64,000 nucleotides of DNA from the NCBI GenBank assembly GCA_002269645.1, contig NIVC01002906.1, positions 62,001 to 126,000 of the forward strand. Reading direction: 5' to 3'. Shown here piece by piece: positions 13,184 to 42,334 of this stretch (within the stretch, counting starts at the first letter, position 1; every line of letters starts with the position of its first letter). The stretch comes from Macrostomum lignano. Lineage: Eukaryota. Under the pieces are notes generated by a model, which was given only the letters and a program-made list of their open reading frames with translations, had not been told where the DNA came from and did no database searches. Position numbers and translations under genes: made by a program.

Positions 13184-14166
13184 GAATACGCAGTTAGCGT
13201 CACAGGGCGCGCTTCAAGGCCAGGTCGCGAATGAACGCCACGCCGCCGGCCGAATCCGGGACGCCGGCGTCAGCCAGCAGGCAGTCGACGAAACGCCGAG
13301 TGCGCGCCTGCCCCTGCCGGTAGGTGCCTGCAGCGTCAGCAGCAGCACCTCCTGCACCGGCTGTGGGCAGTACGACTCGGCGCGGATGATGCGGTCTGCC
13401 AGCTGGAGTCGCCGACGGCGCAAAAGGTCGCTTGGACGGACCAGGCCTTTGCGGCGATACAAAGCCGCGTTGGTCACTCGCTCGTAGCCGATCGTGAAGG
13501 CGGCGCGCAGCAGCCCAGCGTGCGCCGCGTCAACCTGCTGCTCGAGCGACTCCGTCAGCGTCCAGGTCTCGGCGTTGTACAGCAGGACGGTCTCGGTCAC
13601 CGCCTGGAACAACGCCACCCTCTGGCGGTCAGGTAAGGCCTCGGACTGCAGGACTGCCCTCACAGAACGAAAGGCAGCCCAGGCAAGCCCGCGGCGACGC
13701 CGCAAATCCTCGCGGACGCTGGGAACCAGACCGCCGAGGTAGACCAACTGCTGACAACGCGGAAGCTCTGTCGCCTTTCCATCAGCGCCTCGGCACAAAA
13801 TCATAGCCTCGATGTCGTCTGGCACGCAGAGCACGACGGTCTTCTGCGTGTTGACCACCAGGCCGACGCTCGCCGCAACAGCAACTAGCTTGTCCATTTG
13901 TCGCTGGGCGCCCTCGACAGTTAAGGACAGCAGGGCGAGATCGTCGGCGTAGCCAAGCACGCTGAGCCGCCTCTCCGGTTGACGTTGACCCACGCGTCGC
14001 CGCAACAGAAAGCCGTCGTCGTTGGTAGGAAGAGCGGTCCGCAGCACCCAGTCAAGCACCAGAACGAACAGGAACGGCGCAAGCGTATCTCGACCAGACC
14101 AGACCGCCGAGGTAGACGAATTGCTGACAACGCGGAAGCTCTGTCGCCTTTCCATCAGCGCCTCGG
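13135..14166 (-). mobile_element. 5'-truncated non-LTR retrotransposon (RTE-like LINE): RT C-terminal half plus microsatellite tail
   Basis: Minus ORF contains RT motifs DTLAPFLFVLVLDWVLR, LGYADDLALL, GLVVNTQKT and YLG, plus the RTE-type region LFQAVTETVLLYNAETW. The 3' end is a (GTT)16 tail (13135-13182). A 1-bp deletion at 13323-13324 shifts the C-terminus; the restored stop is at 13200-13202. No TSD found. Confidence 0.9.
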
Positions 14167-14779
14167 AAAGGAAAGCTAAAAGTGACGCCTTGCGCAGACT
14201 ACTCGTAAGATTCGATTTCAATTCGGAAGAAGCATTATCCAGCGATGACTCGACGGAGATTGAATCAGAATTGAGTCGGAAAGCATGGATTCAGAATAGC
14301 CGAATCCCGAGAGAATTGCAAGAAAAATGAGTGGTTGCTCATGCAGGCCTTCATGAGGTGCAATCAGACACTCGGACCTCGGGAACAAAGGCCGGCTACC
14401 TTCAGGACACAAGCATTCCTGCCGCTTCCACTGATGTTCGCAGAGTTCGTCGCAGTGGTCAAGTTGAACAAATTCCGACTTGATGCATCCTTGATGTAAG
14501 CACATGTCAAAGCCTGATTTAAGCATGCTTGACCGCCGGCCCAGCTGTACATGCCGCTAATTACCGTTGTTAATCCCCGGATTAAATGCTCGTTAACCGA
14601 CCAAAGAAAGCTGCACAGAATTTCTTTTTTTTTTCAAGACCCCACAGTCAGAACAATTTTGTCATTTTGCGAAAAAAGTTGGCCTCCCCCCCTCCCTACT
14701 CGAGTCCCCGACTTTGAGTACTGCCGCTGAGCCGCGCAGCGGAAACCGAGTTCCCCTGCTCCGGCCGAGCAAAGAGCGG

Positions 14780-18070: not shown

Positions 18071-21000
18071 ATGACCGCGCAGAAGCAGCAGATCCTCGGC
18101 AGCGCGTTCAAGATCGACAACCTGCTGAAGGACACGGCGTCGCCTGTCAAGTCCTCCACGTCGTCGGCGATTTCGGCGGAGCTGTCGGGGATGCTCGCGA
18201 CTGGACTGCAGCACCAGCCGCCGCCGCCGCCGCCGCTGCCGTCGACTCCCAGAATGCCGTTTGACTTTGCCGCCGGCTTCCCCTACCCGCCGCTTCTGCC
18301 GCCCCTGAGCGGCGCCTACAAGTGCGACTCGGCCGCCTTCTTCCTGCCCGGCGGCGGTAAGCTGGGATAAAATTGGGATAAATCTCCCATCATTGACACA
18401 CACTGAGGTAGATTGGGATAAATCTCCCATCAGTGACACACACTGAGGTATATTGGGATAAATATCCCATCATTGTTACACTGAGGTAGATTGGGATAAA
18501 TATCCCATCATTGATACACACTGAGGTAGATTGGGATAAATCTTCCATGATTGGCACACATTGAGGTAGATTGGGATAAATCTCCCATCAGTGACATACA
18601 CTGAGGTAGATTGGGATAAATCTCCCATCAGTGACATACTGGGGTAGATTGGGATAAATCTCCCATCATGGACACACTGAGGTAGATTGGGATAAATCTT
18701 CCATCATTGTCACACTGAGGTAGATTGGGATAAATCTCCCATCAGTGACACACACTAAGGTAGATTGGGATAAATATCCCATCATTGTCACACTGAGGTA
18801 GATTGGGATAAATTTCCCATCATTGACACACATTGAGGTAGATTGGGATAAATCTCCCATCAGTGACATACACTGAGGTAGATTGGGATAAATCTCCCAT
18901 CAGTGACATACACTGAGGTAGATTGGGATGAATCTCCCATCATTGGCACACTGAGGTAGATTGGGATAAATCTTCTATCATTGACACACTAAGGTAGATT
19001 GGGATAAATCTCCCATCAGTGACATACTGGGGTAGATTGGGATAAATTTCCCATCAGTGACATACTGGGGTAGATTGGAATAAATCTCACATCATTGTCA
19101 CACTGAAGTAGATTTGAATAAATCTCCCGTCATTGTCACACTGAGGTAGATTGGGATAAATCTCCCATCAGTGACATACTGAGGTAGATTGGGATAAATC
19201 TCCCATCATGGACACACTGAGGTAGATTGGGATAAATCTTCCATCATTGTCACACTGAGGTAGATTGGGATAAATCTCCCATCATTGACACACACTGAGA
19301 TAGATTGGGATAAATATCCCATCATTGATACACACTAAGGTAGATTGGGATAAATCTCCCATCAGTGACATACTGGGGTAGATTGGGATAAATCTCCCAT
19401 CAGTGACATACTGGGGTAGATTGGAATAAATCTCACATCATTGTCACACTGAAGTAGATTGGGATAAATCTCCCGTCATTGTCACACTGAGGTAGATTGG
19501 GATAAATCTCCCATCATGGACACACTGAGGTAGATTGGGATAAATCTTCCATCATTGACACACACTGAGATAGATTGGGATAAATATCCCATCATTGTCT
19601 CACTGAGGTAGATTGGGATAAATTTCCCATCATTGACACACACTGAGATAGATTGGGATAAATATCCCATCATTGATACATACTGAGGTAGATTGGGATA
19701 AATCTTCCATGATTGGCACACATTGAGGTAGATTGGGATATATCTCCCATCAGTGACATACTGAGGTAGATTGGGATAAATCTTCCATCATTGTCACACT
19801 GAGGTAGATTGGGATAAATCTTCCATCATTGACACACACTGAGATAGATTGGGATAAATCTCCCATCATTGGCACACTGAGGTAGATTGGGATAAATATC
19901 CTATCATTGACACACTAAGGTAGATTGGGATAAATCTTCCATGATTGGCACACATTGAGGTAGATTGGGATAAATCTCCCACCATTAACACACTGAGATA
20001 GATTGGGATATATCTCCCATCATTGACACACTAAAGTAGATTGGGATAAATCTCTCACAAATTAAATTGAGCTAGATAGGTACTGGGTGTTAAAATGATA
20101 GTACAATCCCGCAATCCCAGCCTTGCTGTTAATCTCTTTTTGCCCCACCTAACAAGCAGAATTGGCCCGCAATCGGAGGTAACCGCCGCTCTCTCCCCTG
20201 CTGGGAAGATTGAAAGCCCCTCCCCATTGAAAACGGGAGAAAGAATTCCGTTTCCCCAGCACTCGAGGAGAGCACAGCTCGCAATCGGCAGATTCCTGTA
20301 ACAAAATTGGCTCCCCGCCATCAACTTGTTATCGCTTTAGCCAGTCAGTTGGGGGGGGGGCATTGGGATAAACGGATTTACAAAATCTACTTAACAACTG
20401 ACGCCTTATCAAATCAAACGAGCGGGCCTCCCAAACCGACACCTCTCGGCCGACAATGGGGCTGAGCAGGGATGCGATTTACTCACGTGAAATTGAGTCA
20501 GAGCCACGTGGCCACTTCTCGGTAGTCCTGGCCAGTTATTATTGTCAGCCGCTGCTCGCTAAACAGAGTAATCTTGCTTTCTGCCCCTGGGTTCGGGAAG
20601 ATAGACTGAGTCTGGGGCAGTCGCGAGGCGTGGCGTTTATCCCTGATTGAGGCTGGGACAAATCTCTCCTAGTCGCCTCGTCATCTCCTCCTATTTAGCT
20701 TTTTTGCCGTTGATCCCCTTTTCGACCAGAGCCGAAAGCAGAGCAAAGTAAAGCCAGAAGGAAGCAGAGCTCAGATTGCCCAATTAGTCCGGGGATAATA
20801 ATCCCCAGGCTCTGGGAAGCCACCGACTCGGCTAAGGAGTAATTGGCTACCAATTTCTCGGAAATGTTGCATCTTCGTCTTGCAGAAATTTGTGCCGCCC
20901 GTTATGACCTGCACCCGCGCTCTGCCTCCCGTCTGCTTTCTTCTTCTTCTGTCTCTCTGATCCGAGACTTCGTTAACTTTGAAGATTGGCAAAGGGGGCG

Positions 21001-22227: not shown

Positions 22228-23190
22228 CTCCTGGGGAAACCCGGCTCAGTTTCTGTTTTCCCCATCCCTTCCCATGCTAGATTTGGCTTTAACCAAGCAT
22301 TGCAGACTTACATGTAGCACTGCTATTACCAGTATTTCTCGTATGCTGAAAATATGAGGCATGCAATTTTTTGAATCCAGCAGCAGAGAGAACTCATTAA
22401 TTTATTGTGCAATCTTTAGCTTGTTTAACAGATTTGACTTCTGCTACTTGAAGTAGAAGTATTGTGTTCTCTAATCTTATATTCGGTCTAGTGTTACAGA
22501 TTAATGATGACATCTAAAAAAAGATCGTTGAATTCAGTTCTGAAGATTTAATAACGAAAACTATTGCAATGATCCTTATCTTTGCATGCTACTGTTTCCC
22601 AAACATTTACCCTTAAATTTTCGTTTCATAAGTTATTCTGTCAGATTGCTGTTTTTTAATAATTAAGTTTTATCGTGTCCCTGCATTGAGCTATTGAGTT
22701 AAAGTTTTGATATAAGTAACTAAATTTTATGATGTATACAGCACCCTAATTATATGACGATGAAAGAAAATGAATAATGAACCACCTTTATTTAAAAGTT
22801 AAAAACGCCAAGTCGTACATGTACATGTACATATTTAAATCTTCTTTCTCAGCTTGATAGTACCGGTATTGTCAGTAAGGCCGGCGCCATGTATGTACGT
22901 ATACATGCTTGCCCAGCTAACTACATGTACCGGTAGTTCTGCGAGCGCGTAGCGCGCAAGGGTCTCTCCTCTGCGTCCTAATAATATGGGGTTACATGTA
23001 CATTTAGGCTCTTACAAACCATGCAGATCGATTTGCAAATTGCTTCCCAATTTAATTGAAATACCTGCAAAAGTCTCCCTTAGCAAGCAGCACCAAAATA
23101 CGAAGCATTAAAAAATACCAATAAAATTGGCTGATAAGTTTTCAAAGAAAATCTTTGTCAGGTTAGTTTCCAACAGCTCGATGAGGAATG

Positions 23191-25424
23191 GGTAGACTTT
23201 AAAACCCTCCAGAGCCAAACCCTCCAGAGCCAAAAATACTCCACAGCCAAAAAATCTATCTTGGCTGTACGTTTTAACCCCCCAAGACCAAAAATTATTG
23301 GGCTTTGCTAAGCGCGTCCATTTTTATATATCTGTTTCTAAATAGTATATTCAATTGCTGCAGAAATTGAAGGCCAGCCGTTTGTTATTCTGAACCAAAA
23401 CACTCCGGACCCAATTAATTTGCTGTGATAATAGTTATATTCCCCCAATACCAAAATTTGACACCCATTTTTCTGTTTATTTTTTTGTATAAACTGTTCT
23501 GCTGGTTTGATGTAGCAACCAAGGTCGTTGTTATGTATTGGCAACACAAACAAACGAACATTTTAAAATTTTCTATTTTAAATTGCGCGTGCAGCACGTG
23601 CACGGTCTGTGCTAACTGTGTTAGCAGTCCTAGAACTCCTGTCAGTAGTTCAAGAGTATGGGGTACTGTCGTGTATACATCTAGGCATTTTCCTTATTAG
23701 CTAATTCAGTTAATTATTAAGCACATATAGTTATTTTAAAAATAATATTCTTAACGCTAAAATTTAAGAGTGCCGCATGTGCATTCACTGGACAATCTAA
23801 TTTGATTAATCTTAATTCAAATCTAATTCAATCTAATTTAATATAATTTTGGACTATAGCCTAAGACTATCTGGTTTCAACTAAGAATTACCCCTAAAAT
23901 CGCCCTAAAAGTTTGATCCCTAAATGGTCTTATGAATTGCGCCCCAAAGCTGCCCGAAAAATATTACTATAGTCAAATAGTGCCTTTTAACTTTTAACTT
24001 TTAACCATACCATGCTGACATATTTAAGGTTTTATATATTGTAGAATTGCATATCACGTTTGGTTATACTGTTAGTTATTAAAATACATGCTCATGGCAT
24101 GCTTATATATGAGGCTTGAGCTGCATCACATATGCACCTCTTCCAACAGTACTTATCAGTACTTATCACTATTTAGTATTTAATAGTTAATTTCTCATCT
24201 AGAAATGTTTCAAAAAAGGTTCAATTTTTGCTTGGCTGCAAGGAAACAAAACTTAATTCTAATAAATATAAATAAAATATTTCTGATTTTACTGCACCAA
24301 AATCTTCAAAAGCACAAATTTTCTTCTTAATTATACTGAGCTACTGCTGTACAATAGTTAAAAATTTCATAAAGTGTTGTATTAGCAACTATAATGGTTT
24401 CATAAAGAAGAATAACTGATTAACCTCAACACCTCATAAATTAGCACCCCATAAATCAGCACCCCTTCAAGAGGTGCCAACATCTCTTCAATCAGCACCC
24501 CTTCAAGAGGTGCCAGCATCTCTTCAATCAGCACCCCTTCAAGAGGTGCCAGCATCTCTTCAATCAGCACCCCTTCAAGAGGTGCCAGCATCTCTTCATT
24601 CGGTACCCCTTCAAGAGGTGCCAGCATCTCTTCAATCAGCACCCCTTCAAGAGGTGCCAGCATCTCTTCAATCAGCAACCCCTTCAAGAGGTGCCAACAT
24701 CTCTTCAATCAGCAACCCCTTCAAGAGGTGCCAGCATCTCTTCAATCAGCACCCCTTCAAGAGGTGCCAGCATCTCTTCAATCAGCAACCCCTTCAAGAG
24801 GTGCCAGCATCTCTTCAATCAGCACCCCTTCAAGAGGTGCCAGCATCTCTTCATTCGGTACCCCTTCAAGAGGTGCCAGCATCTCTTCAATCAGCACCCC
24901 TTCAAGAGGTGCCAGCATCTCTTCAATCAGCAACCCCTTCAAGAGGTGCCAGCATCTCTTCAATCAGCACCCCTTCAAGAGGTGCCAGCATCTCTTCAAT
25001 CAGCACCCCTTCAAGAGGTGCCAGCATCTCTTCAATCAGCACCCCTTCAAGAGGTGCCAGCATCTCTTCAATCAGCACCCCTTCAAGAGGTGCCAGCATC
25101 TCTTCAATCAGCACCCCTTCAAGAGGTGCCAGCATCTCTTCAATCAGCAACCCCTTCAAGAGGTGCCAGCATCTCTTCATTCGGTACCCCTTCAAGAGGT
25201 GCCAGCATCTCTTCAATCAGCACCCCTTCAAGAGGTGCCAGCATCTCTTCAATCAACAACCCCTTCAAGAGGTGCCAGCATCTCTTCATTCGGTACCCCT
25301 TCAAGAGGTGCCAGCATCTCTTCAATCAGCACCCCTTCAAGAGGTGCCAGCATCTCTTCAATCAACAACCCCTTCAAGAGGTGCCAGCATCTCTTCATTC
25401 GGTACCCCTTCAAGAGGTGCCAGT
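23191..25424 (+). repeat. Left modular TIR: ~1265-bp unique arm plus ~27 copies of a 36/37-bp unit (CAGCATCTCTTCAATCAGCACCCCTTCAAGAGGTGC) at ~24456-25424
   Basis: Reverse complement of 30804-33985. The ORF track gives identical translations on opposite strands (e.g. 24400..24708 vs 32466..32774). Confidence 0.93.
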
Positions 25425-25543
25425 ATCTCGATCTTCAATAAACAACCTTCGGGGGGTGCGAGCACCTCTTTAATCGGTAGGTTGTTGTCACCCGTTTCAG
25501 ATTTAACATTTATTGTACACACTTTTTCTTTTCGTAATTTCAG

Positions 25544-28500
25544 TCGACAGATTGGCAATTTATTCTTGGGAGGCTGCAGTCGGTCTTTCTCGTGGGCCTA
25601 CATGACGCAGCTCTCACTGCCGCAGAGGTGCTAAGAGCAATTGGAGAGCTTCGGCTTCCATCACAGCGTCCCGACCCACAACGCCTCAGATTACTGTACG
25701 GTGAGCAGACAAGCTCTACATCCTTGCTAGATCGGTACGGACCTCACGGCATGACCATCCAAACGACGGGAATTGGAAACTGCTTCTTTGAGTCTGTGGC
25801 GCTTGTACTGACTGGCAGTCGTGAATTTGCTCTAGAGCTGCGTGTGCGCACGGTTATTGAATTGCTCCTAAATTATCGCCAATACGAAGTCTTTTTAGAG
25901 AAAGAAAATGATCTGATTCGAGAGCCTAGTATGACCGCAGTAGTCACGAATGTCATGACTCTAAATTCAGCAGTCGACTGCACTGCAGTTTGTGCCGCTG
26001 CAGAAGTGGTACATGCGGCAATCGCATTTACGTTTCCGCAACTACCGGGAATTGCAGCTACTCTTGCTGGCGTCCTCAAGCGAACATTTTCTCCACGTTC
26101 TGCTATCACTTCACAAGGGGAAATATCCTTGCTCTGGACGAGGGCTGTCGAATGGCCCTACTCAAATGGAAACGGGTGGATTCCCAACCATATCTGCCCA
26201 TTTTTTGGAGGCCAAAGTTTAACAGCAACTGAAGCGGAACCGCAAGTGCTGAGTTCAGAATCACCTATGGAAGATTGTGATGTAGACATGGGGTCTTCAA
26301 GTGCTGCAATGCATGAAGCAGTGGTCGGTAAAAGTCTGCCGGCTGCATCTTGCTTTCTTGGAGTACCGGCAGTAATTTCCGCTGCTTTGAGCTACAATGC
26401 TATCAGGACACCCCCAACGCAGCCAAAAGAGGATGGAATATTTTCTGTGAGCCTAAGTGCGAGTGAAGCGGCAGAAGATGGATGGCGATGGTTGGAGAAA
26501 AAAAGCATTCACAACCGCATTTACGCTAGTGATGGCCGACTGCTACAGCAGTCTGGTGACAATTTCTTTTGGAAGAGGAGATCCGGCCGCCAGTACTCGG
26601 AAGAAATATTGGCCCGCGGCGAGGCCGTTTATGAAATTAGGCAGTTCACCCGTAAGCACGCTTCACAGCCACGATTTGTACAACGAGCATCGGAAGTCCG
26701 CATGCTGCTGCCAGAGGATCGTTTGGTGTCAAGTATCATTGAATACAGCTGGAATGGCGAGCCGGCACCGTTGTGGAATCCACCTCATGGCAATGCAAAG
26801 AAGAACTTTGATTCTCAGCAAAAAGCTGCAAAGAAAAGCTTAGACGAAGCCGCACGTCAGCTTGCAAGCGGTGTGCCTGTGGGGCAAGTCTTGAAGAACG
26901 TTCCAGATCTCCGTGGACGTCAACAATTGCATGGAATCAAAACGAGACTGAGACATAAAGATGAGTCTTTGCTGAGCCAAGAACCATGGACAGTCTTGAT
27001 GAAGATGTGCTGGAGCAACGAAGGTGCGGCACGTTATGTTCGAGGATTTCACACAACATCAGAAGGTAACACTTCAGTGTGGATTTGGAGTGACGCTCAA
27101 GTCTCTATTCTGAATAGCCAGGCCGGAAAAGGGAACCCTATTTGCATTGATACGACGTTTGGTGAGTGCGCGTTTGCTACGTTCATTACTTTCGCTGATC
27201 GTAGGCTTGTTCAGAAAGTTTCTGGAAAGAATGCTACCCTTTTCGGGCCTGGCTTCATTCATACAAAAGAGCGAGATGCTGAGTCTTTGGAGATGTTCCT
27301 TCGCAAACTGAAAGCTTTGGTTCCGAACCTTGATCCAATCTTTTTGTTCTGATCAGGACTCTATGATCATGAAACGGGTCAAGGAAATTTGGCCAAACCG
27401 GATTCACCTTCTCGGTAGAGAGCACCTTTTAATGAATCTGGCGGACAAGTGTCGTAGTTTGGGGATGTCCAATGCTGCTCGACACAGCGTCAAGTCTGAC
27501 TTGTTCGGTCCGGCGTCTTGTGCTGACAGACCTGCCATTCTAAGTGCCGAGAACGAAGAGATTTTTGATGACCGCTTGAAAGAATACTCCAAGCAGTGGA
27601 GTTTGCTCAGTCCTGCAATCACGAATTGGATCGTAGTAAGTACTTCTTTCATATCTACTATAGTTTTGCTAGATTTTAATTGAGGAGGCAAGCAAAACTA
27701 CTTGCATAGAACCAGTTGGAGCTCAGAGATAAAGTATCTCTACACTATCTGTTAGCGATCGGCGCGCATGCAAATTCTATTCCCAATTTTCAGGATCGTG
27801 CCGATATCTACAAGGAGCATGCGTCCAATTGGGTACTGGAAGAAGCAGGAGTCGAATCTGCTTGGCAACAGGCCCAAGAACGAAAAAACCGATCGCTCAA
27901 AGAACAACGGTCACAGCACAAGAAACGCTCACCTGTGGATCTTGCAAGCGAAATGATCAAGCTGGCAGCAAGTGAGGAAGAAGAGGAGAAAGCCACTTTA
28001 ACTGGCAGTAGCGCGAAAGTAAGAATTGCGCCGCAATTCTTACGCTTTGCTGTCGACTCGTCAGATTGGATTCTGTTCACTGACGAGGAGAGAACGAATC
28101 ATATTGCTCGATTCAGAAATTCCACGTACGTTACAAGCACACGCTCTGCAGGCAGCATGGTTGAACTACCCCGTGCGTTGCCTCGTTGCCCTCCCAATAA
28201 AAGAAAAGGGAAGAAACGAAACAGTCGCTTAGGGCGAAATCGTACTCCAGCATTGAATGAGCGGCAACAAATTCAACTGACAGTGCCAAGTCCTGAAGAT
28301 AGCAGTGACTCTGAGGTTCAAGTCCTGCAGCCTGCAGCTGTATCTGCTCAGCAGAATGCCTTTGTGCGAGTGCAGCCAGCCGGTGGTGTGCAGCCAGCCA
28401 GTGGTGTGCAGCCTGCTGCATCTGCTCAGCAGAATGCCTTTGTGCGAGTGCAGCCAGCCGGTGGTGTGCAGCCAGCCAGTGGTGTGCAGCCTGCTGCATC

Positions 28501-29409
28501 TGCTCAGCAGAATGCCTTTGTGCGAGTGCAGCCAGCCGGTGGTGTGCAGCCAGCCAGTGGTGTGCAGCCTGCTGCATCTGCTCAGCAGAATGCCTTTGTG
28601 CGAGTGCAGCCAGCCGGTGGTGTGCAGCCAGCCAGTTTTGTGCAGCCTGCTGCATCTGCTCAGCAGAATGCCTTTGTGCGAGTGCAGCCAGCCGGTGGTG
28701 TGCAGCCAGCCAGTGGTGTGCAGCCTGCTGCATCTGCTCAGCAGAATGCCTTTGTGCGAGTGCAGCCAGCCGGTGGTGTGCAGCCAGCCAGTGGTGTGCA
28801 GCCTGCTGCATCTGCTCAGCAGAATGCCTTTTTGCGAGTGCAGCCAGCCGGTGGTGTGCAGCCAGCCAGTGGTGTGCAGCCTGCTGCATCTGCTCAGCAG
28901 AATGCCTTTGTGCGAGTGCAGCCAGCCGGTGGTGTGCAGCCAGCCAGTGGTGTGCAGCCTGCTGCATCTGCTCAGCAGAATGCCTTTGTGCGAGTGCAGC
29001 CAGCCGGTGGTGTGCAGTCTACTTCTACTTTTGCTGGTAATGGAAATTCGCACTACTGGGAGAACAATGAAGAATTCTGTCTTGAGCTGGCCTCACCCCG
29101 CTCGGTTCAATGCGCCGCTTGTCTGCACCCCATTGTATTTTTAGCTCTAGTCGCGGGAGAGCGGCTAGTACTCCGACACACTGAACATTTTCTGTATCCC
29201 ACTGGCCCTGCTAATGACAAGTGGTCCAGCACCACAGGCTTACAGCACGGAAGCTACAATGTCGCTTTTACCACGCGCGCCGTGCCTGCATTTTCAGTCG
29301 CTTCCGTGAGGCATACTTTGCACAAATGCCCATTCGGCTTGCTAGTGGTGTTCGAGCTGAATTGGCGCGCCATCCAGTAGACTTTTTGCACAAGGATATC
29401 CCTAATTAA
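25544..29409 (+). CDS. Transposase polyprotein ~1260 aa: vertnin-like OTU protease, putative WRKY/GCM1-like DNA-binding region, MULE DDE domain, 26-aa repeats and C-terminal C2HC zinc finger; one 74-nt intron (27636-27709) and two 1-bp homopolymer frameshifts
   Basis: OTU: GIGNCFFESVALVLTGSREFALELRVRTVIELLL...W...PNHICP. DNA-binding-like: DGWRW...PPHGNAK. DDE: CIDTTF (D at 27149), CSDQD (D at 27351), GREH in place of the CxxH motif, and QERKNRSLK (E at 27878). Frame restored by removing one T at 27341-27345 and adding one T at 29266-29269. GTAAGT/CATAG intron is phase 0. Start codon not identified. Confidence 0.82.
28328..29017 (+). repeat. 78-bp in-frame coding tandem repeat (QPAASAQQNAFVRVQPAGGVQPASGV), ~9 copies
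   Basis: Seen directly in ORF 27716..29380. Confidence 0.95.
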
Positions 29410-30803
29410 CAGCATGTATTAGTGATGACTCTACTTTATGAATTAATATTTACAATTTGCAAGTCGTGTATACAAAGTACTGATTGTTGTCATGCTTTTC
29501 ATTGTTTGTGTAACTGCCCTGCTTATGATCGTCGTCGGCGCCCCATACCGATAGTACGAGTGTACTCGAGGTAAATATAGTTTTAATAGCTTAGTTTACA
29601 GTGCGCAAGGAGTTGCTAGATTAAGACGTTGGTACTGACAATTCACGCTTGCTGTTTCTTATTCTTTGTTACTGTTGTGTCTACTTTTTGGCGGCGTTCC
29701 CTTGGATCAGAGGTGTCAAGCGGTAGGCTTTTAATCTATTTACACCTTCACGGTTTTTTATGTTTAACTGATGCCAAATGCCTAATTCCTAGCGCCTAAT
29801 CTTAGCTTTCACGGCTTTAATTGTTAGTCCCTATTTTGAGTCTTCACGACTTCAGTATAGTCCCTATTCCAAGTACTTCCTATGAATCTCCACAACTTCG
29901 GTATTCCCTAGAAAAGAGTCAACATAGGTTTGTAGGTTTATAGGATTTAGCGGAAATTTATTTGAGAGCTAAAAAGCATATTAAAGAAATTACGAGTCTT
30001 CAACAAGATGGTATTTTTCCCGGCTCAGATAGAGCCTTTATGTAGAAATTGTGCGGGAGCACCGGTCAGCCGTAATCGGTGGAAGCGCAGTTAAAACAAA
30101 AAAAGCACAGGGAATATTAACAAAAGCAAAATTACAGCAGAAGATAACATTATAAAACAAATATACGGGAAATTCTATGATTGATCGTAATTCCCGTCCG
30201 ATTACTACTACTTTTAATTTAGTTTACTACTACTATTAGTAAACTAAGTTTTGATTGGTTTGCCACTAATCAATCATCTCTCCAACCTTTGCTTCGGGAT
30301 TACGTCACGCTTCCAACCCTAACACACTGTGCTACTATGCGAGCGTTGACTTTCATATCTCGTATTTTGATCCTATAAATGCACAAGCAATTAAAAAAAT
30401 TGCTCGAGTAGGGTTTCTCTAGAGGCTGAATTTCCGGTGACTGTTTACAAATTCATTTTACGCGCCTTACTTAATCTCTGTATTTCTTCCCTTGGTTTTA
30501 CTATTTACTGCAATTAGTACACTATTTAATATTTATTGCAATTAGTACACTATTTAATATTTATTGCAATTAGTACACTATTCATTATTGATTGCAATTA
30601 GTACACTATTATATAGCTGTGTGAAATGCGCATCATATGTATTCCATTCTGTGGTTCTGTTGATCAAGAATGATAAAGTCATTGGTAATAAAACAGAAAT
30701 AGACGAACGTGCTTTTATTCTGACAATGGACCTAACAAGCTACGATGAAAAGACAAACGCGTACGCTGCATCAGCTTTTTTTCATTGATCTCGTCATTAA
30801 TAG

Positions 30804-33800
30804 GGCACCTCTTGAAGAGGGTTGCTGATTGAAGAGATGCTGGCACCTCTTGAAGGGGTGCTGATTGAAGAGATGCTGGCACCTCTTGAAGGGGTGCTGA
30901 TTGAAGAGATGCTGGCACCTCTTGAATGGGGTGCTGATTGAAGAGATGCTGGCACCTCTTGAAGGGGTACCGAATGAAGAGATGCTGGCACCTCTTGAAG
31001 GGGGTGCTGATTGAAGAGATGCTGGCACCTCTTGAAGGGGTTGTTGATTGAAGAGATGCTGGCACCTCTTGAAGGGGTGCTGATTGAAGAGATGCTGGCA
31101 CCTCTTGAAGGGGTGCTGATTGAAGAGATGCTGGTACCTCTTGAAGGGGTGCTGATTGAAGAGATGCTGGCACCTCTTGAAGGGGTGCTGATTGAAGAGA
31201 TGCTGGCACCTCTTGAAGGGGTACCGAATGAAGAGATGCTGGCACCTCTTGAAGGGGTTGCTGATTGAAGAGATGCTGGCACCTCTTGAAGGGGTGCTGA
31301 TTGAAGAGATGCTGGCACCTCTTGAAGGGGTTGCTGATTGAAGAGATGCTGGCACCTCTTGAAGGGGTTGCTGATTGAAGAGATGCTGGCACCTCTTGAA
31401 GGGGTACCGAATGAAGAGATGCTGGCACCTCTTGAAGGGGTTGCTGATTGAAGAGATGCTGGCACCTCTTGAAGGGGTGCTGATTGAAGAGATGCTGGCA
31501 CCTCTTGAAGGGGTTGCTGATTGAAGAGATGTTGGCACCTCTTGAAGGGGTTGCTGATTGAAGAGATGCTGGCACCTCTTGAAGGGGTGCTGATTGAAGA
31601 GATGCTGGCACCTCTTGAAGGGGTGCTGATTGAAGAGATGCTGGCACCTCTTGAAGGGGTGCTGATTGAAGAGATGCTGGCACCTCTTGAAGGGGTTGCT
31701 GATTGAAGAGATGCTGGCACCTCTTGAAGGGGTACCGAATGAAGAGATGCTGGCACCTCTTGAAGGGGTTGCTGATTGAAGAGATGCTGGCACCTCTTGA
31801 AGGGGTGCTGATTGAAGAGATGCTGGCACCTCTTGAAGGGGTGCTGATTGAAGAGATGCTGGCACCTCTTGAAGGGGTTGCTGATTGAAGAGATGCTGGC
31901 ACCTCTTGAAGGGGTGCTGATTGAAGAGATGCTGGCACCTCTTGAAGGGGTGCTGATTGAAGAGATGCTGGCACCTCTTGAAGGGGTGCTGATTGAAGAG
32001 ATGCTGGCACCTCTTGAAGGGGTGCTGATTGAAGAGATGCTGGCACCTCTTGAAGGGGTACCGAATGAAGAGATGCTGGCACCTCTTGAAGGGGTGCTGA
32101 TTGAAGAGATGCTGGCACCTCTTGAAGGGGTTGCTGATTGAAGAGATGCTGGCACCTCTTGAAGGGGTGCTGATTGAAGAGATGCTGGCACCTCTTGAAG
32201 GGGTTGCTGATTGAAGAGATGTTGGCACCTCTTGAAGGGGTTGCTGATTGAAGAGATGCTGGCACCTCTTGAAGGGGTGCTGATTGAAGAGATGCTGGCA
32301 CCTCTTGAAGGGGTACCGAATGAAGAGATGCTGGCACCTCTTGAAGGGGTGCTGATTGAAGAGATGCTGGCACCTCTTGAAGGGGTTGCTGATTGAAGAG
32401 ATGCTGGCACCTCTTGAAGGGGTGCTGATTGAAGAGATGCTGGCACCTCTTGAAGGGGTTGCTGATTGAAGAGATGTTGGCACCTCTTGAAGGGGTTGCT
32501 GATTGAAGAGATGCTGGCACCTCTTGAAGGGGTGCTGATTGAAGAGATGCTGGCACCTCTTGAAGGGGTACCGAATGAAGAGATGCTGGCACCTCTTGAA
32601 GGGGTGCTGATTGAAGAGATGCTGGCACCTCTTGAAGGGGTGCTGATTGAAGAGATGCTGGCACCTCTTGAAGGGGTGCTGATTGAAGAGATGTTGGCAC
32701 CTCTTGAAGGGGTGCTGATTTATGGGGTGCTAATTTATGAGGTGTTGAGGTTAATCAGTTATTCTTCTTTATGAAACCATTATAGTTGCTAATACAACAC
32801 TTTATGAAATTTTTAACTATTGTACAGCAGTAGCTCAGTATAATTAAGAAGAAAATTTGTGCTTTTGAAGATTTTGGTGCAGTAAAATCAGAAATATTTT
32901 ATTTATATTTATTAGAATTAAGTTTTGTTTCCTTGCAGCCAAGCAAAAATTGAACCTTTTTTGAAACATTTCTAGATGAGAAATTAACTATTAAATACTA
33001 AATAGTGATAAGTACTGATAAGTACTGTTGGAAGAGGTGCATATGTGATGCAGCTCAAGCCTCATATATAAGCATGCCATGAGCATGTATTTTAATAACT
33101 AACAGTATAACCAAACGTGATATGCAATTCTACAATATATAAAACCTTAAATATGTCAGCATGGTATGGTTAAAAGTTAAAAGTTAAAAGGCACTATTTG
33201 ACTATAGTAATATTTTTTCGGGCAGCTTTGGGGCGCAATTCATAAGACCATTTAGGGATCAAACTTTTAGGGCGATTTTAGGGGTAATTCTTAGTTGAAA
33301 CCAGATAGTCTTAGGCTATAGTCCAAAATTATATTAAATTAGATTGAATTAGATTTGAATTAAGATTAATCAAATTAGATTGTCCAGTGAATGCACATGC
33401 GGCACTCTTAAATTTTAGCGTTAAGAATATTATTTTTAAAATAACTATATGTGCTTAATAATTAACTGAATTAGCTAATAAGGAAAATGCCTAGATGTAT
33501 ACACGACAGTACCCCATACTCTTGAACTACTGACAGGAGTTCTAGGACTGCTAACACAGTTAGCACAGACCGTGCACGTGCTGCACGCGCAATTTAAAAT
33601 AGAAAATTTTAAAATGTTCGTTTGTTTGTGTTGCCAATACATAACAACGACCTTGGTTGCTACATCAAACCAGCAGAACAGTTTATACAAAAAAATAAAC
33701 AGAAAAATGGGTGTCAAATTTTGGTATTGGGGGGAATATAACTATTATCACAGCAAATTAATTGGGTCCGGAGTGTTTTGGTTCAGAATAACAAACGGCT

Positions 33801-33985
33801 GGCCTTCAATTTCTGCAGCAATTGAATATACTATTTAGAAACAGATATATAAAAATGGACGCGCTTAGCAAAGCCCAATAATTTTTGGTCTTGGGGGGTT
33901 AAAACGTACAGCCAAGATAGATTTTTTGGCTGTGGAGTATTTTTGGCTCTGGAGGGTTTGGCTCTGGAGGGTTTTAAAGTCTACC
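30804..33985 (-). repeat. Right modular TIR: ~53 copies of the 36/37-bp unit (30804-32720) plus ~1265-bp unique arm
   Basis: Inverted copy of the left TIR. The only difference I noticed in the unique arm is C5 (~23441) vs G6 (~33729). Confidence 0.93.
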
Positions 33986-34242
33986 TGAGGAATGCCCAAC
34001 GATAACCTAAAGTAGGTTAATTAAGAAAATCTTGAGGGAAAGCTCTTTAATTGTTTTATTTTTAAGCAAATTACTTCTAAGTATAAACTATATTAGTCAC
34101 AAAGTGTTTAAATAGTTTGTTATAACGGTATAAAAGCGTCCTTAGATTATTTGCATTTTTGTTTACGCGACCATTAAATCAGTAATAAAAAGTTGTAAAG
34201 GTTAGGTATTGAAAGAAAACATTCCTAAACTAAATTTTCGAG

Positions 34243-40069: not shown

Positions 40070-40756
40070 CTCACCGCTCGACACAGTCGTCAATAATTAA
40101 ATTGGATTATATGGTTTTGTCAATAATAAAAATTACCTTAACAAAGTATCTGGGTGATTAAATATCTTACATACAAATTCATTATTGAATTTTAAGCAAA
40201 CTTTTGAAATTCACTTTCAAAGATCAAAATCGGCACACATGGAGTTCACATAGTACAAAAATCTCAATTTTCTCTGCCTGATGAAACAATCGTTATGAAA
40301 ATAAAACTGCGCAATCGTACTTGCACAGAGTTACTCATGTAATATACTACTGTAGTGCTGAAGCTTCTGCTATGATGCTGATGCATCAACAGTTTTGTTG
40401 ATGAAGACATTTTTACTTATTTTGTGAAGGATTGACGATCTACGAACTAAAGATTGTATTCAAGAGAGAAAAGGATTTTGTCCTCCTATTTAATATCTAC
40501 ATAAATCTTGCCACAATTTTGTGAAACAATTAAAAGGAGACAACTTTCCTGCATCAAACTTTTGAGCATAGGCGTAGGAACGGGGGGGGACAGTGGGGCC
40601 ATGCCCCCCATCACTTTTTAAAGCGGGGGGCCAGAAATGGTATCTGGCCCCTCCACATTTTAAATGCAAAATGTAGACTTTTTGCTTTTTTTTACTCTTA
40701 TTTTTTTATTTTTGCTGCTTTGCATGAATGCGTTTTGCTGCAGGGCGACAAAACAT

Positions 40757-42215
40757 AGCGCCTGCGGCACCATGAGTGCCTGCGGCGCTAAAATGAGTGC
40801 CTGCGGCGCCAAAATGAGTGCCTGCGGCGCCAAAATGAGTGCCTGCGGCGCCAAAATGAGTGTCTGCGGCGCCAAAATGAGCGCCTTCGGCGCCAAAATG
40901 AGTGCCTGCAGCGCCAAAATGAGTGCCTGCAGCGCCAAAATGAGTGCCTGCGGCGCTAAAATGAGTGTCTGCAGCGCCAAAATGAGTGCCTGCGGCGCCA
41001 AAATGAGTGCCTGCGGCGCCATGAGTGCCTGCGGCGCTAAAATGAGTGCCTGCGGCGCCATGAGTGCCTGCGGCGCCAAAATGAGTGCCTGCGGCGCTAA
41101 AATGAGTGTCTGCGGCGCCAAAATGAGTGCCTGCAGCGCCAAAATGAGTGCCTAAGGCGCTAAAATGAGTGCCTGCGGCGCCAAAATGAGTGCCTGCAGC
41201 GCCAAAATGAGTGCCTGCGGCGCTAAAATGAGTGTCTGCGGCGCCAAAATGAGTGCCTGCAGCGCCAAAATGAGTGCCTGCGGCGCTAAAATGAGTGCCT
41301 GCGGCGCCAAAATGAGTGCCTGCGGCGCTAAAATGAGTGTCTGCGGCGCCAAAATGAGTGCCTGCAGCGCCAAAATGAGTGCCTAAGGCGCTAAAATGAG
41401 TGCCTGCGGCGCCAAAATGAGTGCCTGCAGCGCCAAAATGAGTGCCTGCGGCGCTAAAATGAGTGTCTGCGGCGCCAAAATGAGTGCCTGCAGCGCCAAA
41501 ATGAGTGCCTGCGGCGCTAAAATGAGTGCCTGCGGCGCCAAAATGAGTGCCTGCGGCGCTAAAATGAGTGTCTGCGGCGCCAAAATGAGTGCCTGCAGCG
41601 CCAAAATGAGTGCCTAAGGCGCTAAAATGAGTGCCTAAGGCGCTAAAATGAGTGCCTGCGGCGCCAAAATGAGTGCCTGCGGCGCCAAAATGAGTGCCTG
41701 CGGCGCCAAAATGAGTGTCTGCGGCGCCAAAATGAGCGCCTTCGGCGCCAAAATGAGTGCCTGCAGCGCCAAAATGAGTGCCTGCAGCGCCAAAATGAGT
41801 GCCTGCGGCGCCAAAATGAGTGCCTGCGGCGCTAAAATGAGTGCCTGCGGCGCCATGAGTGCCTGCGGCGCCAAAATGAGTGCCTGCGGCGCTAAAATGA
41901 GTGTCTGCGGCGCCAAAATGAGTGCCTGCAGCGCCAAAATGAGTGCCTAAGGCGCTAAAATGAGTGCCTGCGGCGCCAAAATGAGTGCCTGCAGCGCCAA
42001 AATGAGTGCCTGCGGCGCTAAAATGAGTGTCTGCGGCGCCAAAATGAGTGCCTGCAGCGCCAAAATGAGTGCCTGCGGCGCTAAAATGAGTGCCTGTGGC
42101 GCCAAAATGAGTGCCTGCGGCGCTAAAATGAGTGTCTGCGGCGCCAAAATGAGTGCCTGCAGCGCCAAAATGAGTGCCTAAGGCGCTAAAATGAGTGCCT
42201 GCGGAGCTAAAATGA
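40757..42215. repeat. 21-bp minisatellite (GAGTGCCTGCGGCGCCAAAAT), ~70 copies, with a 231-bp (11-unit) higher-order repeat
   Basis: The GCCTAAGGCGC variant recurs at 231-bp spacing, giving identical ORFs at 41165, 41396 and 41960. Confidence 0.95.
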
Positions 42216-42334
42216 GTGGTGACAACACCGATTCTAAAAATAATTGGTACATTATAATGTGCATTTTCCATATAAAAAAAACAGAAAAACCTAACTCAAC
42301 AAGGGGCGTGCACCCTGTGCGCCCCCACCCCAAA

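What the first reader, a model, noticed from the sequence alone, without database searches (positions are those of the whole stretch)
25720..26210. Transposase carries an N-terminal vertnin-like OTU cysteine protease with catalytic Cys and His retained
Seen in the sequence: TTGIGNCFFESVALVLTGSREFALELRVRTVIELLLNYRQY ... SLLWT ... WIPNHICP, with Cys at 25781-25783 and His at 26189-26191. From memory, vertebrate vertnin (VRTN) has the similar motif LELRARTVVEMLLH in an OTU-like domain that lacks the GNC cysteine. Established: OTU domains are deubiquitinases, and plant Mutators (Kaonashi) are known to have captured the related-function Ulp1 protease. Inferred: this element may encode an active deubiquitinase or self-processing protease, as a possible counter-silencing or transposase-stabilising function, and may represent the mobile pool from which vertnin-type OTU domains derive. 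The Asp normally preceding GNC is replaced by Ile, so activity is uncertain.
Basis: partly seen in the sequence, partly recalled or inferred. Interest (0 to 1): 0.8.

Follow-up and report, generated by a model that had tools for sequence, protein, structure and literature searches.

The report
Mutator-type transposon carrying a vertnin-type OTU domain
A recently inserted 10.8-kb Mutator-type DNA transposon encodes one long protein whose front end is an OTU-fold (deubiquitinase-type) domain of the same subfamily as the dead OTU domain of vertebrate vertnin, but this copy has lost two conserved residues beside the catalytic Cys and His and has a broken transposase frame, so whether it is active is unknown.

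Summary

The domain (about 25709-26215) is an OTU fold:
- 218 homologues, best E 1.2e-14; 35 of 38 tested hit Pfam OTU.
- The family profile hits OTUD1, Cezanne, A20 and VCPIP1.
- The AlphaFold model (pLDDT 85.8) matches only OTU deubiquitinases.

It is vertnin-type. Pig, human and zebrafish VRTN score 71 bits against the family model, with Cys replaced by Leu and His by Tyr.

It sits in the same exon as a divergent MULE transposase. The element (23191-33985) resembles Foldback/Phantom elements: 9-bp TSD and 2.3-kb TIRs with 36-bp arrays. At least 18 database representatives share the OTU-then-MULE order.

The same OTU subfamily also occurs in a Helitron Rep/Hel protein and in a protein with a tyrosine-recombinase (Phage_integrase) domain.

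Caveats for this copy:
- Ile replaces the D/N of DGNC, which is unique among 111 relatives.
- Gln replaces a second near-invariant Asp.
- A 1-nt T-run frameshift breaks the DDE domain.
- No start codon or N-terminal PHD exon was found.

OTU on Ginger1 and Helitrons, Ulp1 on MULEs, and vertnin as an inactive OTU are all published. OTU on a MULE, and the link between vertnin and transposon-borne OTUs, were not found in the searchable literature. Catalytic activity is untested.

The parts
23182..23190 (.). Left copy of the 9-bp target-site duplication, TGAGGAATG
   Evidence: Identical 9-mer directly flanks both ends of the element
23191..24453 (+). Outer, non-repetitive part of the left terminal inverted repeat (starts GGTAGACTTTAAAACCC)
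   Evidence: 1263 nt against 1265 nt on the right: 0 mismatches and two 1-nt gaps
24454..25429 (+). Left subterminal array of a 36-bp unit, 27 copies (inner part of the TIR, Foldback-like)
   Evidence: TRF score 1749, 95% matches. The inverted counterpart lies at 30804-32720
25478..25543 (+). Candidate intron (gtaggt ... tttcag) ahead of the coding exon. The 5' exon and start codon were not found
   Evidence: Read from the sequence. An in-frame TAA lies at 25535. Homology to P0054 and P0074 begins at about 25550. No PHD-like exon was detected
25544..27635 (+). Main coding exon: OTU domain, linker, WRKY/FLYWCH-like region and MULE DDE core. It is broken by one frameshift
   Evidence: Collinear tblastn and MAFFT alignments with P0054, P0005 and P0074
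25706..25708 (+). Gln39 codon at the position of a near-invariant family Asp (88 of 96 sequences). Glu38 lies just before it
   Evidence: Vertnin keeps this Asp (EVDSVALSLY)
25709..26215 (+). Vertnin-type OTU-fold domain (ORF residues about 40-208)
25772..25774 (+). Ile61 (ATT) replacing the Asp/Asn of the (D/N)GNC Cys-loop
   Evidence: Family column: D 94, N 15, G 1, R 1 of 111. No hydrophobic residue occurs elsewhere
25781..25783 (+). Catalytic-position Cys64 (TGC), at the N-terminus of a predicted helix
   Evidence: Cys in 106 of 111 relatives. Aligns to OTUD1 and A20 DGNC
26189..26191 (+). Catalytic-position His200 (CAT), at the start of the last predicted beta-strand
   Evidence: His in 106 of 111 relatives. 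The family HFVPL aligns to A20 H256 FVPL
26474..26803 (+). Conserved region between the OTU and DDE domains (EDGWRW ... PPHGNAKK), probably the WRKY/FLYWCH-type DNA-binding module of Phantom-type MULEs
   Evidence: Conserved with P0054, P0005 and P0074. Relatives P0048, P0066 and P0153 hit Pfam FLYWCH at the same position. The window itself has no Pfam hit here, so this is inferred
27140..27428 (+). MULE DDE core: first Asp in ICIDTTF (27140-27160), second Asp in CSDQD (27345-27359), and LLGREHL (27408-27428)
   Evidence: Pfam MULE E=0.016 after frame repair. phmmer hits to 14 MULE-bearing relatives, best 3.7e-49. Invariant D, D and E columns
27341..27345 (+). T5 homopolymer with one extra T: a +1 frameshift inside the DDE domain, giving a stop at 27350-27352
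   Evidence: Homologues read straight through. Removing one T gives DPIFCSDQD, which matches EPYFISDEC in P0054
27636..27793 (+). Intron, 158 nt, phase 0 (gtaagt ... tttcag)
   Evidence: Frames before and after it join in line with P0054 and P0074
27794..29380 (+). Last coding exon. The conserved AWQQ.QERKNR.LK segment is followed by an in-frame array of a 78-bp (26-aa) unit at 28337-29017 and a unique tail
30804..32720 (-). Right subterminal 36-bp array, 53 copies
32721..33985 (-). Outer part of the right TIR
33986..33994 (.). Right copy of the 9-bp TSD, TGAGGAATG

Best explanation
Window 23191-33985 is a young Mutator-superfamily DNA transposon of the Foldback/Phantom-like kind. It has a 9-bp TSD and 2.3-kb TIRs whose inner halves are 36-bp tandem arrays. 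Its single gene encodes a multidomain transposase: a vertnin-type OTU papain-fold domain, then a WRKY/FLYWCH-like DNA-binding region, then a MULE DDE catalytic core. The OTU module is an old, stably inherited part of this transposase lineage, not a recent host-gene capture.

Across the lineage the Cys, the His and the Cys-loop Asp/Asn are conserved. The module is therefore most likely an active thiol isopeptidase that removes ubiquitin or a ubiquitin-like modifier from the transposase itself, or from chromatin or repair proteins at the transposition site. This is the role already proposed for Ulp1 in MULEs and for OTU in Ginger1 and Helitrons, and it is inference.

In this particular copy Cys64 and His200 remain. 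However, the Cys-loop Asp is Ile, a second near-invariant Asp is Gln, the DDE domain has a 1-nt homopolymer frameshift, and no start codon or N-terminal exon is visible. As sequenced, the copy is probably non-autonomous, and its OTU domain is weakened or catalytically dead. It could still bind ubiquitin.

Shown here: fold, family membership, fusion, element boundaries and residue states. Inferred: the substrate, the activity and the role in transposition. The confidence of 0.6 is for the whole statement. The identity part alone (an OTU fold of the vertnin type, fused to a MULE transposase in a TIR element) I put at about 0.95.
For: Element: TSD and TIRs. A 9-bp TSD and FB-like composite TIRs are typical of Phantom/Foldback MULEs (PMC3169594).

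OTU fold:
- 218 homologues.
- 35 of 38 hit Pfam OTU.
- The family profile hits OTUD1 at 1.1e-10, and also OTUD7B, A20, VCPIP1 and OTUD5.
- AF2 model with pLDDT 85.8 and pTM 0.83.
- The listed Foldseek matches (top 50) are all OTU deubiquitinases at probability 1.00, with TMq up to 0.65.
- Cys64 lies at a helix N-terminus and His200 at a strand start, as in OTUs.

Fusion: one exon spans the OTU domain and the first DDE Asp. The protein aligns collinearly at 24-30% identity with P0054, P0005 and P0074.

Ancient module:
- 14 representatives carry the OTU domain N-terminal to a homologous transposase. All 14 keep Cys and His, and 13 keep Asp (1 has Asn).
- Further OTU-FLYWCH-MULE and PHD-OTU-MULE proteins exist.
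- P0054 is an intronless ORF on a contig with inverted-repeat ends.

Vertnin type: VRTN scores 71 bits against the family HMM, compared with 44.5 bits for the best canonical OTU against a related profile. UniRef names P0004 'Vertnin'.

Defects in this copy: residues; frameshift; no start.
Against: - No biochemical data exist for any member of this subfamily.
- The only studied member, vertebrate vertnin, is classified as an inactive OTU (PMC10318531).
- The window's domain misses Pfam OTU even at E<=1.
- The family has Val, not Asp/Asn, at His+2 in 104 of 111 members. The third catalytic residue is therefore unidentified, as in the A20 class, where it lies elsewhere.
- The Cys-His distance could not be measured, because model coordinates are not returned.
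- The frameshift may be a sequencing artefact: the only differences between the two outer TIRs are two 1-nt gaps. 'Non-autonomous' may therefore be wrong.
- In OTUB1 the equivalent Asp (D88) is not a triad member (PMC10803509), so Asp to Ile does not prove inactivity.
Confidence: 0.6

Rival explanations
1. The OTU domain is a pseudo-enzyme throughout this clade, like vertnin. It would act as a ubiquitin/Ubl-binding or protein-docking module that tethers the transposase to ubiquitinated chromatin or to E2 enzymes, without catalysis. OTUB1 has such a non-canonical, catalysis-independent function.
For: Vertnin belongs to this subfamily and lacks both Cys and His (PMC10318531). The window copy has lost two conserved acidic residues. 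OTUB1 has well-documented non-catalytic functions that depend on the Asp of its Cys-loop (PMC10803509). The family has no acidic residue at His+2.
Against: Cys and His are each kept in 106 of 111 family members, and in all 14 MULE-linked representatives, at 23-33% overall identity. That pattern is what selection on catalysis produces. Pure binding modules such as vertnin lose these residues.
Confidence: 0.2
2. The OTU domain is a cis-acting processing protease. It would cut the large polyprotein to release the transposase from its N-terminal PHD/OTU part, as OTU-like PLP2 proteases do in arterivirus polyproteins.
For: The domain sits N-terminal in a multidomain protein longer than 900 aa. The window has Gly-Gly five residues after the His-loop (HICPFFGGQ), which resembles a ubiquitin-like cleavage site.
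Against: The Gly-Gly is absent from the closest relatives: P0054 has NHFVPLVFVSPS, P0005 has NHFVPIIPTS and P0074 has NHICLLVSIP. No conserved cleavage motif was seen. The same OTU subfamily also occurs as short stand-alone proteins and in Helitron Rep/Hel, where polyprotein processing is not expected.
Confidence: 0.07
3. The OTU sequence is a host-gene fragment recently captured by a MULE (Pack-MULE style) and has no role for the element.
For: MULEs are known for acquiring host fragments (PMC6446971 abstract). Most family representatives are short OTU-only proteins.
Against: The OTU-linker-DDE order is collinear in proteins only 24-30% identical to the window, and in at least 18 representatives in all; those with a named source are molluscs and a tunicate, the rest come from unnamed assemblies and metagenomes. 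The domain is in the same exon and frame as the transposase. Catalytic residues are conserved in the fused forms.
Confidence: 0.03

Closest known systems
Vertebrate vertnin (VRTN), classified as an inactive OTU-like homologue (PMC10318531)
   Same: Same OTU subfamily. VRTN scores 71 bits (E 4e-18 at Z=1e6) against the family HMM. It shares ELR(A/V)RT.(V/I)E.LL, the upstream phi-D..A..L motif, SxxWxxxALASV, IYP and IMW. Direct BLASTP of the window domain against pig VRTN gives 38% identity over 56 aa.
   Different: VRTN has Leu for the Cys and Tyr for the His, while the window keeps both. VRTN has C-terminal STYYxWK helix-turn-helix repeats and no DDE transposase. It is a single-copy host gene, not a TIR-bounded element.
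Ulp1-bearing Mutator elements (Kaonashi/KI-MULEs of Arabidopsis, melon, rice and maize; hydra and lancelet MuDR) (PMC2836005)
   Same: A Mutator-superfamily element carrying a papain-clan Ub/Ubl-type cysteine protease domain, sometimes together with a PHD finger.
   Different: The protease there is Ulp1/C48 (SUMO-type), a different fold family from OTU. The window has no Ulp1 hit. The protease is OTU and lies N-terminal in the same polypeptide as the DDE domain.
OTU-bearing Ginger1 transposases and animal Helitrons (PMC2836005)
   Same: OTU domains attached to transposition proteins. A Helitron Rep/Hel protein (P0126) carries an N-terminal OTU of this same vertnin-type subfamily.
   Different: The transposition enzymes differ: a Gypsy-like integrase (with the OTU C-terminal) or Rep/helicase. 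Here the enzyme is a MULE DDE transposase and the element has a 9-bp TSD.
Phantom/Foldback-type Mutator elements (Tm1 of Meloidogyne, Drosophila FB) (PMC3169594)
   Same: Composite long TIRs with internal tandem repeats, a 9-bp TSD and a MULE transposase. Relatives have FLYWCH ahead of MULE.
   Different: Published Phantom transposases are described as FLYWCH + MULE, with no protease domain mentioned. The window's own FLYWCH-like region gives no Pfam hit.
A20/Cezanne/VCPIP1 class of OTU deubiquitinases
   Same: The His-loop HFVPL is identical to A20 H256-FVPL, and His+2 is Val rather than Asp/Asn. These give the best TM-scores normalised to the query (VCPIP1 0.65, A20 0.63).
   Different: Sequence identity is only 10-18%. 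The position of a third catalytic residue equivalent to A20 Asp70 could not be established. These proteins have no TE context.

Membership tests
OTU superfamily (Pfam PF02338, papain-like clan) | OTU alpha/beta fold | tested here: met
   AF2 model with pLDDT 85.8 and pTM 0.83. The 50 listed Foldseek PDB matches are all OTU domains: OTUD1 at 6e-6, VCPIP1 with TMq 0.65, A20 with TMq 0.63.
OTU superfamily (Pfam PF02338, papain-like clan) | Catalytic Cys in a (D)GNC Cys-loop at a helix N-terminus | tested here: met
   GIGNC with Cys64. The family DGNC aligns with OTUD1, OTUD7B and A20 DGNC. The helix starts at the Cys.
OTU superfamily (Pfam PF02338, papain-like clan) | Conserved Asp (or Asn) three residues before the Cys | tested here: not met
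   Ile61 in the window. The family has D 94, N 15 and other 2 of 111.
OTU superfamily (Pfam PF02338, papain-like clan) | Catalytic His in the His-loop at a beta-strand start | tested here: met
   WIPNHICP with His200. The family HFVPL aligns with A20 H256. The strand runs over model residues 171-177.
OTU superfamily (Pfam PF02338, papain-like clan) | Score above the Pfam OTU gathering threshold | tested here: not met
   No hit even at E<=1 for the window protein. 35 of 38 homologues hit at E<=0.01. Membership therefore rests on the transitive profile and the fold.
OTU superfamily (Pfam PF02338, papain-like clan) | Cys and His side chains juxtaposed, and a third polarising residue present | not testable with these tools
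   Model coordinates are not returned. His+2 is Cys in the window and Val in the family. The upstream conserved Asp is Gln in the window.
OTU superfamily (Pfam PF02338, papain-like clan) | Isopeptidase activity on ubiquitin or Ubl substrates | not testable with these tools
   Needs biochemistry.
Vertnin-type OTU subfamily | Significant match to a subfamily profile that also captures vertebrate VRTN better than canonical OTUs | tested here: met
   Window 121.9 bits and VRTN 71.3 bits against an HMM of 111 relatives built without either sequence; shuffled controls score below 2 bits. The best PDB OTU (OTUD1) reaches 44.5 bits against the related A2 profile. P0004 is named Vertnin by UniRef.
Vertnin-type OTU subfamily | Signature motifs: phi-D..[AS]..phi-L, ELRVRT.IE, SS.WT..ALA.V, SVYP.VNG, I.IMWT, W.PNHFVPL | tested here: inconclusive
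   Present: ELRVRTVIE, ISLLWT, WIPNH. Altered or absent: the upstream Asp (Gln), SS.WT, YP..NG (FPQLPG) and HFVPL (HICPF). The closest MULE-linked relatives also lack SS.WT and YP.VNG.
Mutator superfamily (MULE), Phantom/Foldback-like | 9-10 bp target-site duplication | tested here: met
   TGAGGAATG on both sides.
Mutator superfamily (MULE), Phantom/Foldback-like | Long terminal inverted repeats, with internal tandem repeats in FB-like elements | tested here: met
   About 2.3-kb TIRs. The outer 1.26 kb has 0 mismatches. The inner parts are 36-bp arrays of 27 and 53 copies.
Mutator superfamily (MULE), Phantom/Foldback-like | MULE DDE transposase domain | tested here: met
   Pfam MULE reaches only E=0.016 (16 bits, against a 27.6-bit cut-off) after frame repair. 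However, phmmer gives 3.7e-49 to P0054, which has a weak, sub-threshold Pfam MULE match (E 3.3e-4, 21.5 bits against a 27.6-bit cut-off), and E 6e-15 to 5e-13 to P0039 and P0007, which hit Pfam MULE and/or Transposase_mut. The D, D and E columns are invariant. The reading frame is broken at 27341-27345.
Mutator superfamily (MULE), Phantom/Foldback-like | FLYWCH/WRKY-type DNA-binding domain ahead of the DDE core | tested here: inconclusive
   No Pfam hit in the window's linker at E<=10. A conserved DGWRW...PPHGNAK block is shared with relatives. FLYWCH is significant in P0048, P0066 and P0153 at the same position.
Ulp1-bearing MULEs (Kaonashi type) | Ulp1/C48 peptidase domain | tested here: not met
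   No Peptidase_C48 hit. The protease domain is OTU. The resemblance is in function only.

The most novel reading that the evidence does not exclude
The vertnin-type OTU domain is primarily a transposon-borne module, shuttled between MULE/Phantom, Helitron and tyrosine-recombinase elements of aquatic invertebrates. There it would be a catalytically competent deubiquitinase needed for transposition or for evading host control. Vertebrate vertnin would then be a domesticated derivative of such a transposon protein that lost Cys and His. This would give VRTN, a gene known for controlling vertebral number, a transposon origin, and would define a TE-specific deubiquitinase clade.
Probability: 0.3. 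Interest if true: 0.7.

Novelty: new variant of a known kind. Interest (0 to 1): 0.5.

Why it matters
Protease-bearing DNA transposons have been known for about twenty years, yet their mechanism remains unexplained. This locus adds a new combination of known parts: an OTU domain fused to a Mutator-type DDE transposase.

The analysis around it shows that one OTU subfamily recurs on three unrelated kinds of transposition enzyme: MULE, Helitron Rep/Hel and a tyrosine-recombinase domain. The catalytic residues are conserved in these forms. That is a strong hint that deubiquitination (or removal of a ubiquitin-like modifier) is generally useful to mobile DNA.

The same subfamily contains vertebrate vertnin. 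This gives a concrete, testable route to the origin of an enigmatic developmental regulator, and it supplies active-looking relatives for biochemical work.

The particular copy in the window is probably damaged, so its own value is as a pointer to the family.

Tried and rejected
- Pfam on the three large ORFs of the element gave nothing at E<=1. Pfam on the linker and the C-terminal tail gave nothing at E<=10.
- The word-indexed protein search with the 223-aa N-terminus found nothing. The same search with the four-sequence full-length alignment A3 also found nothing, so that search was wasted. With the 112-sequence alignment it returned only 21 hits and no vertebrate vertnin.
- The single-sequence PDB search gave only a marginal hit: E 0.09 to chain 11nq_A (187 aa), deposited as 'RNA-directed RNA polymerase L', probably a viral OTU domain.
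- A search for an upstream PHD or N-terminal exon by tblastn, using the N-termini of P0054, P0074 and P0005, found nothing better than E about 1. No in-frame ATG exists between the stop at 25535 and Met54. The only nearby ATG (25602) is out of frame and opens a 10-codon ORF.
- The metagenome scan for closer copies returned 25 loci, all at 46% identity or less over their best segment (longer matches 22-33%). Whether Ile61, Gln39 and the T5 run are fixed in this element family could therefore not be tested.
- Rfam found nothing in the window.
- An attempt to equate the family's upstream Asp with A20 Asp70 was abandoned. HMMER's gapless alignment places it at A20 Thr76, and it aligns instead with an Asp in Cezanne's VSVDP.
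- Literature searches for OTU together with MULE or MuDR were swamped by 'operational taxonomic unit' hits and gave no relevant paper. Dupeyron 2019 does not mention any protease.
- Chance similarity and Pack-MULE capture were considered and rejected; see the rival explanations.
Full report
**1. Observation**

The codons are TGC (Cys64) at 25781-25783, CAT (His200) at 26189-26191 and ATT (Ile61) at 25772-25774, the last where OTU proteases have Asp. The coordinates are right. The conserved domain is slightly larger than stated, about 25709-26215.

**2. Is it an OTU domain?**

Direct Pfam scanning of the ORF gives nothing, even at E<=1. A single-sequence PDB search gives only a marginal hit (E 0.09) to chain 11nq_A, deposited as 'RNA-directed RNA polymerase L' and probably a viral OTU domain; the alignment runs through GNCFFE.

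An exhaustive phmmer search of 1.84 billion representative proteins is decisive. It finds 218 homologues at E<=1e-3, with a best E of 1.2e-14, and each covers residues about 40-208.
- Of the 38 best homologues, 35 hit Pfam OTU PF02338.
- Their consensus is GDGNCLFNA...ELRVRT.IE...SS.WT..ALA.V...SVYP.VNG...I.IMWT...W.PNHFVPL.
- A profile of 112 sequences hits solved OTU deubiquitinases: OTUD1 at 1.1e-10, OTUD7B at 9e-7, and also A20, VCPIP1 and OTUD5. The family DGNC lies on their catalytic Cys, and the family HFVPL lies on A20 His256-FVPL (A20 numbering checked).
- An AlphaFold2 model built with this alignment is confident (mean pLDDT 85.8, pTM 0.83).
- The listed Foldseek PDB matches (top 50) are all OTU domains at probability 1.00. 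TM-scores normalised to the query reach 0.65 (VCPIP1) and 0.63 (A20).
- In the model, Cys64 opens a helix and His200 opens the last beta-strand. This is the canonical papain/OTU arrangement.

I could not measure the Cys-His distance, because coordinates are not returned.

**3. Is it vertnin-like?**

The searchable literature classifies vertnin as an inactive OTU-like homologue (PMC10318531). I recovered pig, human and zebrafish VRTN sequences from the supplements of PMC3024977. They are machine-read text, so small errors are possible. The remembered motif LELRARTVVEMLLH is there.

Against an HMM of 111 family members built without the window, VRTN scores 71.3 bits (E about 4e-18 for a database of one million sequences). 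The window domain scores 121.9 bits, and 200 shuffled VRTN sequences score below 2 bits. For comparison, the best canonical OTU in the PDB (OTUD1) reached 44.5 bits against the related A2 profile.

The alignment puts VRTN GEGSLLF on GDGNCLF (Cys to Leu) and HQYFAP on PNHFVP (His to Tyr). UniRef names one family member, from the pearl oyster, 'Vertnin'. So 'vertnin-type OTU with Cys and His retained' is correct.

Only the OTU part is shared. Vertnin's C-terminal STYYxWK repeats match nothing in the family.

**4. What carries it?**

The ORF lies in a 10,795-bp element, 23191-33985, flanked by a perfect 9-bp duplication, TGAGGAATG.
- The TIRs are about 2.3 kb. Their outer 1.26 kb has no mismatches and only two 1-nt gaps.
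- Their inner parts are arrays of a 36-bp unit, 27 copies on the left and 53 on the right.
- This is the Foldback-like architecture with a 9-bp TSD described for Phantom-type Mutator elements (PMC3169594).

Downstream of the OTU domain, the same exon encodes a conserved DGWRW...PPHGNAK block and then ICIDTTF, which holds the first DDE Asp.

A stop at 27350 is caused by one extra T in a T5 run (27341-27345). Removing it gives DPIFCSDQD...LLGREHL, which aligns residue for residue with the relatives. It also gives strong phmmer hits to 14 representatives, up to 3.7e-49; several of those (for example P0039, P0007 and P0101) carry Pfam MULE or Transposase_mut domains, while the closest, P0054, has only a sub-threshold MULE match.

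A 158-nt phase-0 intron (27636-27793) joins a last exon (27794-29380). That exon contains an in-frame array of a 78-bp unit, 8.7 copies.

Homology to relatives starts right after a good splice acceptor at 25543. Upstream there is an in-frame stop, no in-frame ATG before Met54, and no detectable PHD-type exon. The 5' end is therefore unresolved or missing.

**5. Is the fusion old?**

Yes. Three full-length relatives are collinear with the window over OTU, linker and DDE at 24-30% identity: P0054 (960 aa), P0005 (728 aa) and P0074 (1025 aa). P0054 is an uninterrupted ORF on a 5.4-kb metagenome contig whose ends form a 28-nt inverted repeat.

All 14 representatives with a homologous transposase have the OTU domain on the N-terminal side. 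All 14 keep Cys and His, and 13 keep the Asp (one has Asn).

Pfam shows recurrent PHD-OTU-MULE (P0007, P0054, P0101) and OTU-FLYWCH-MULE (P0048, P0066) architectures. Named sources are molluscs (Pinctada, Magallana, Dreissena), a sea spider and tunicates. The rest come from aquatic and other metagenomes or unannotated assemblies.

The same OTU subfamily also sits at the N-terminus of a Helitron Rep/Hel protein (P0126). That protein is among the best matches to VRTN. The subfamily also occurs in a protein with a Phage_integrase (tyrosine recombinase) domain (P0098) and in multi-OTU host-like proteins (P0063). This subfamily is therefore a module that recurs on several kinds of mobile element.

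**6. State of the active site in this copy**

Family counts (111 sequences):

| Position | Family | Window |
|---|---|---|
| Cys | 106 of 111 | Cys |
| His | 106 of 111 | His |
| Cys-3 | D 94, N 15, G 1, R 1 | Ile |
| His+1 | F 107 | Ile |
| His+2 | V 104 | Cys |

No other member has a hydrophobic residue at Cys-3. ATT is one step from the Asn codon AAT.

A second near-invariant Asp lies about 27 residues before the Cys, in the motif phi-D..[AS]..phi-L (88 of 96 sequences). Vertnin keeps it. The window has Gln39 there, with Glu38 next to it.

Val at His+2 and the HFVPL loop resemble the A20 class, where the third catalytic residue lies elsewhere in the sequence. I could not identify that residue here.

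In OTUB1 the Asp of the Cys-loop is not a triad member (PMC10803509). Asp to Ile therefore weakens the case for activity but does not settle it.

**7. Mechanism**

*Shown:* fold, subfamily, in-frame fusion, element structure, and conservation of Cys and His in TE-borne members.

*Inferred:*
- In intact elements the domain is an active thiol isopeptidase for ubiquitin or a ubiquitin-like modifier.
- It serves transposition, for instance by stabilising the transposase or by remodelling ubiquitinated chromatin or repair factors. This was proposed for Ulp1 and OTU on other transposons (PMC2836005).
- The frequent N-terminal PHD finger in relatives suggests targeting to chromatin.

The window copy, as sequenced, cannot make a full transposase, and its OTU domain carries unusual substitutions. 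I rate it as probably impaired. One caveat applies: the only differences between the two outer TIRs are also 1-nt gaps, so the frameshift could be assembly noise.

**8. Rivals**

The rivals are a pseudo-enzyme or binding module, a cis-processing protease, and a recent host-fragment capture. Each is laid out with its evidence in the rival explanations. The last is essentially excluded by the conserved architecture.

**9. Novelty**

Already published:
- OTU on Ginger1 and Helitrons, and Ulp1 on MULEs (PMC2836005).
- FB-like Phantom MULEs (PMC3169594).
- Vertnin as an inactive OTU (PMC10318531).

Not found in the searchable literature:
- An OTU domain fused to a MULE transposase.
- The placement of vertnin inside a TE-associated OTU subfamily.

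Repbase reports and subscription journals were not searchable, so prior description cannot be excluded. I rate the finding as a new variant of a known kind, of moderate interest. The interest lies mainly in the family-level picture rather than in this possibly defective copy.

Noticed in passing
window 24454-25429 and 30804-32720: The inner halves of the two TIRs are arrays of the same 36-bp unit but of very different length (27 and 53 copies). The unit has no stop codon in three frames, which creates long spurious ORFs of up to 661 aa. The arrays may hold repeated transposase-binding sites, as in Foldback elements.
   Followed up: partly
window 28337-29017: An in-frame tandem array of a 78-bp unit (26 aa, AASAQQNAFVRVQPAGGVQPASGVQP), 8.7 copies at 98% identity, lies inside the last exon of the transposase gene. 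The relatives P0054 and P0074 lack it, so it is a recent coding expansion.
   Followed up: partly
window 23191-24453 vs 32721-33985; 27341-27345: The two outer TIR arms differ only by two 1-nt gaps, one of them a C5/C6 run near 23441. The transposase frameshift is also a 1-nt homopolymer change. Homopolymer-length errors in the assembly are a real possibility.
   Followed up: partly
window 25602-25634: The only ATG near the 5' end of the coding exon is out of frame and opens a 10-codon ORF (MTQLSLPQRC*). It could be an upstream ORF or a remnant of a shifted start.
   Followed up: no
whole window, e.g. 598-1425, 18372-20054, 40772-42218, 42324-43550, 50164-52796: The window is packed with minisatellite arrays of 12-43-bp units, up to 85 copies. 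Several arrays create long artefactual ORFs (for example 40706-42271) and strong strand-composition skews at 38-40 kb and 42-44 kb.
   Followed up: partly
window 13214-14221 (- strand): An ORF of 335 aa has a weak reverse-transcriptase (RVT_1) match (E 9e-7, just below the Pfam cut-off). It is probably a retroelement fragment.
   Followed up: no
L001 (JGI metagenome 3300055003 contig, 5447 bp): The closest full-length relative, P0054 (PHD-OTU-MULE, 960 aa), is an intronless ORF on a contig whose ends form a 28-nt perfect inverted repeat (39-66 / 5420-5447). A second 212-aa ORF lies downstream. It looks like a complete small element.
   Followed up: partly
L028 2386-7659 (JGI metagenome 3300015263 contig): A 1757-aa Helitron Rep/Hel protein (Helitron_like_N + PIF1 helicase) carries a vertnin-type OTU domain at residues about 5-210. 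It is among the best matches to pig VRTN. An RPA-like OB-fold ORF follows it.
   Followed up: partly
proteins P0063 (Dreissena polymorpha XP_052227922.1) and P0034 (3220 aa): Host-like proteins with two or three tandem vertnin-type OTU domains. P0063 also has an LRAT/NlpC-P60-type domain.
   Followed up: no
window 26201-26209: A Gly-Gly dipeptide lies five residues after the His-loop (HICPFFGGQ) and resembles a ubiquitin-type cleavage site. It is not conserved in relatives.
   Followed up: yes
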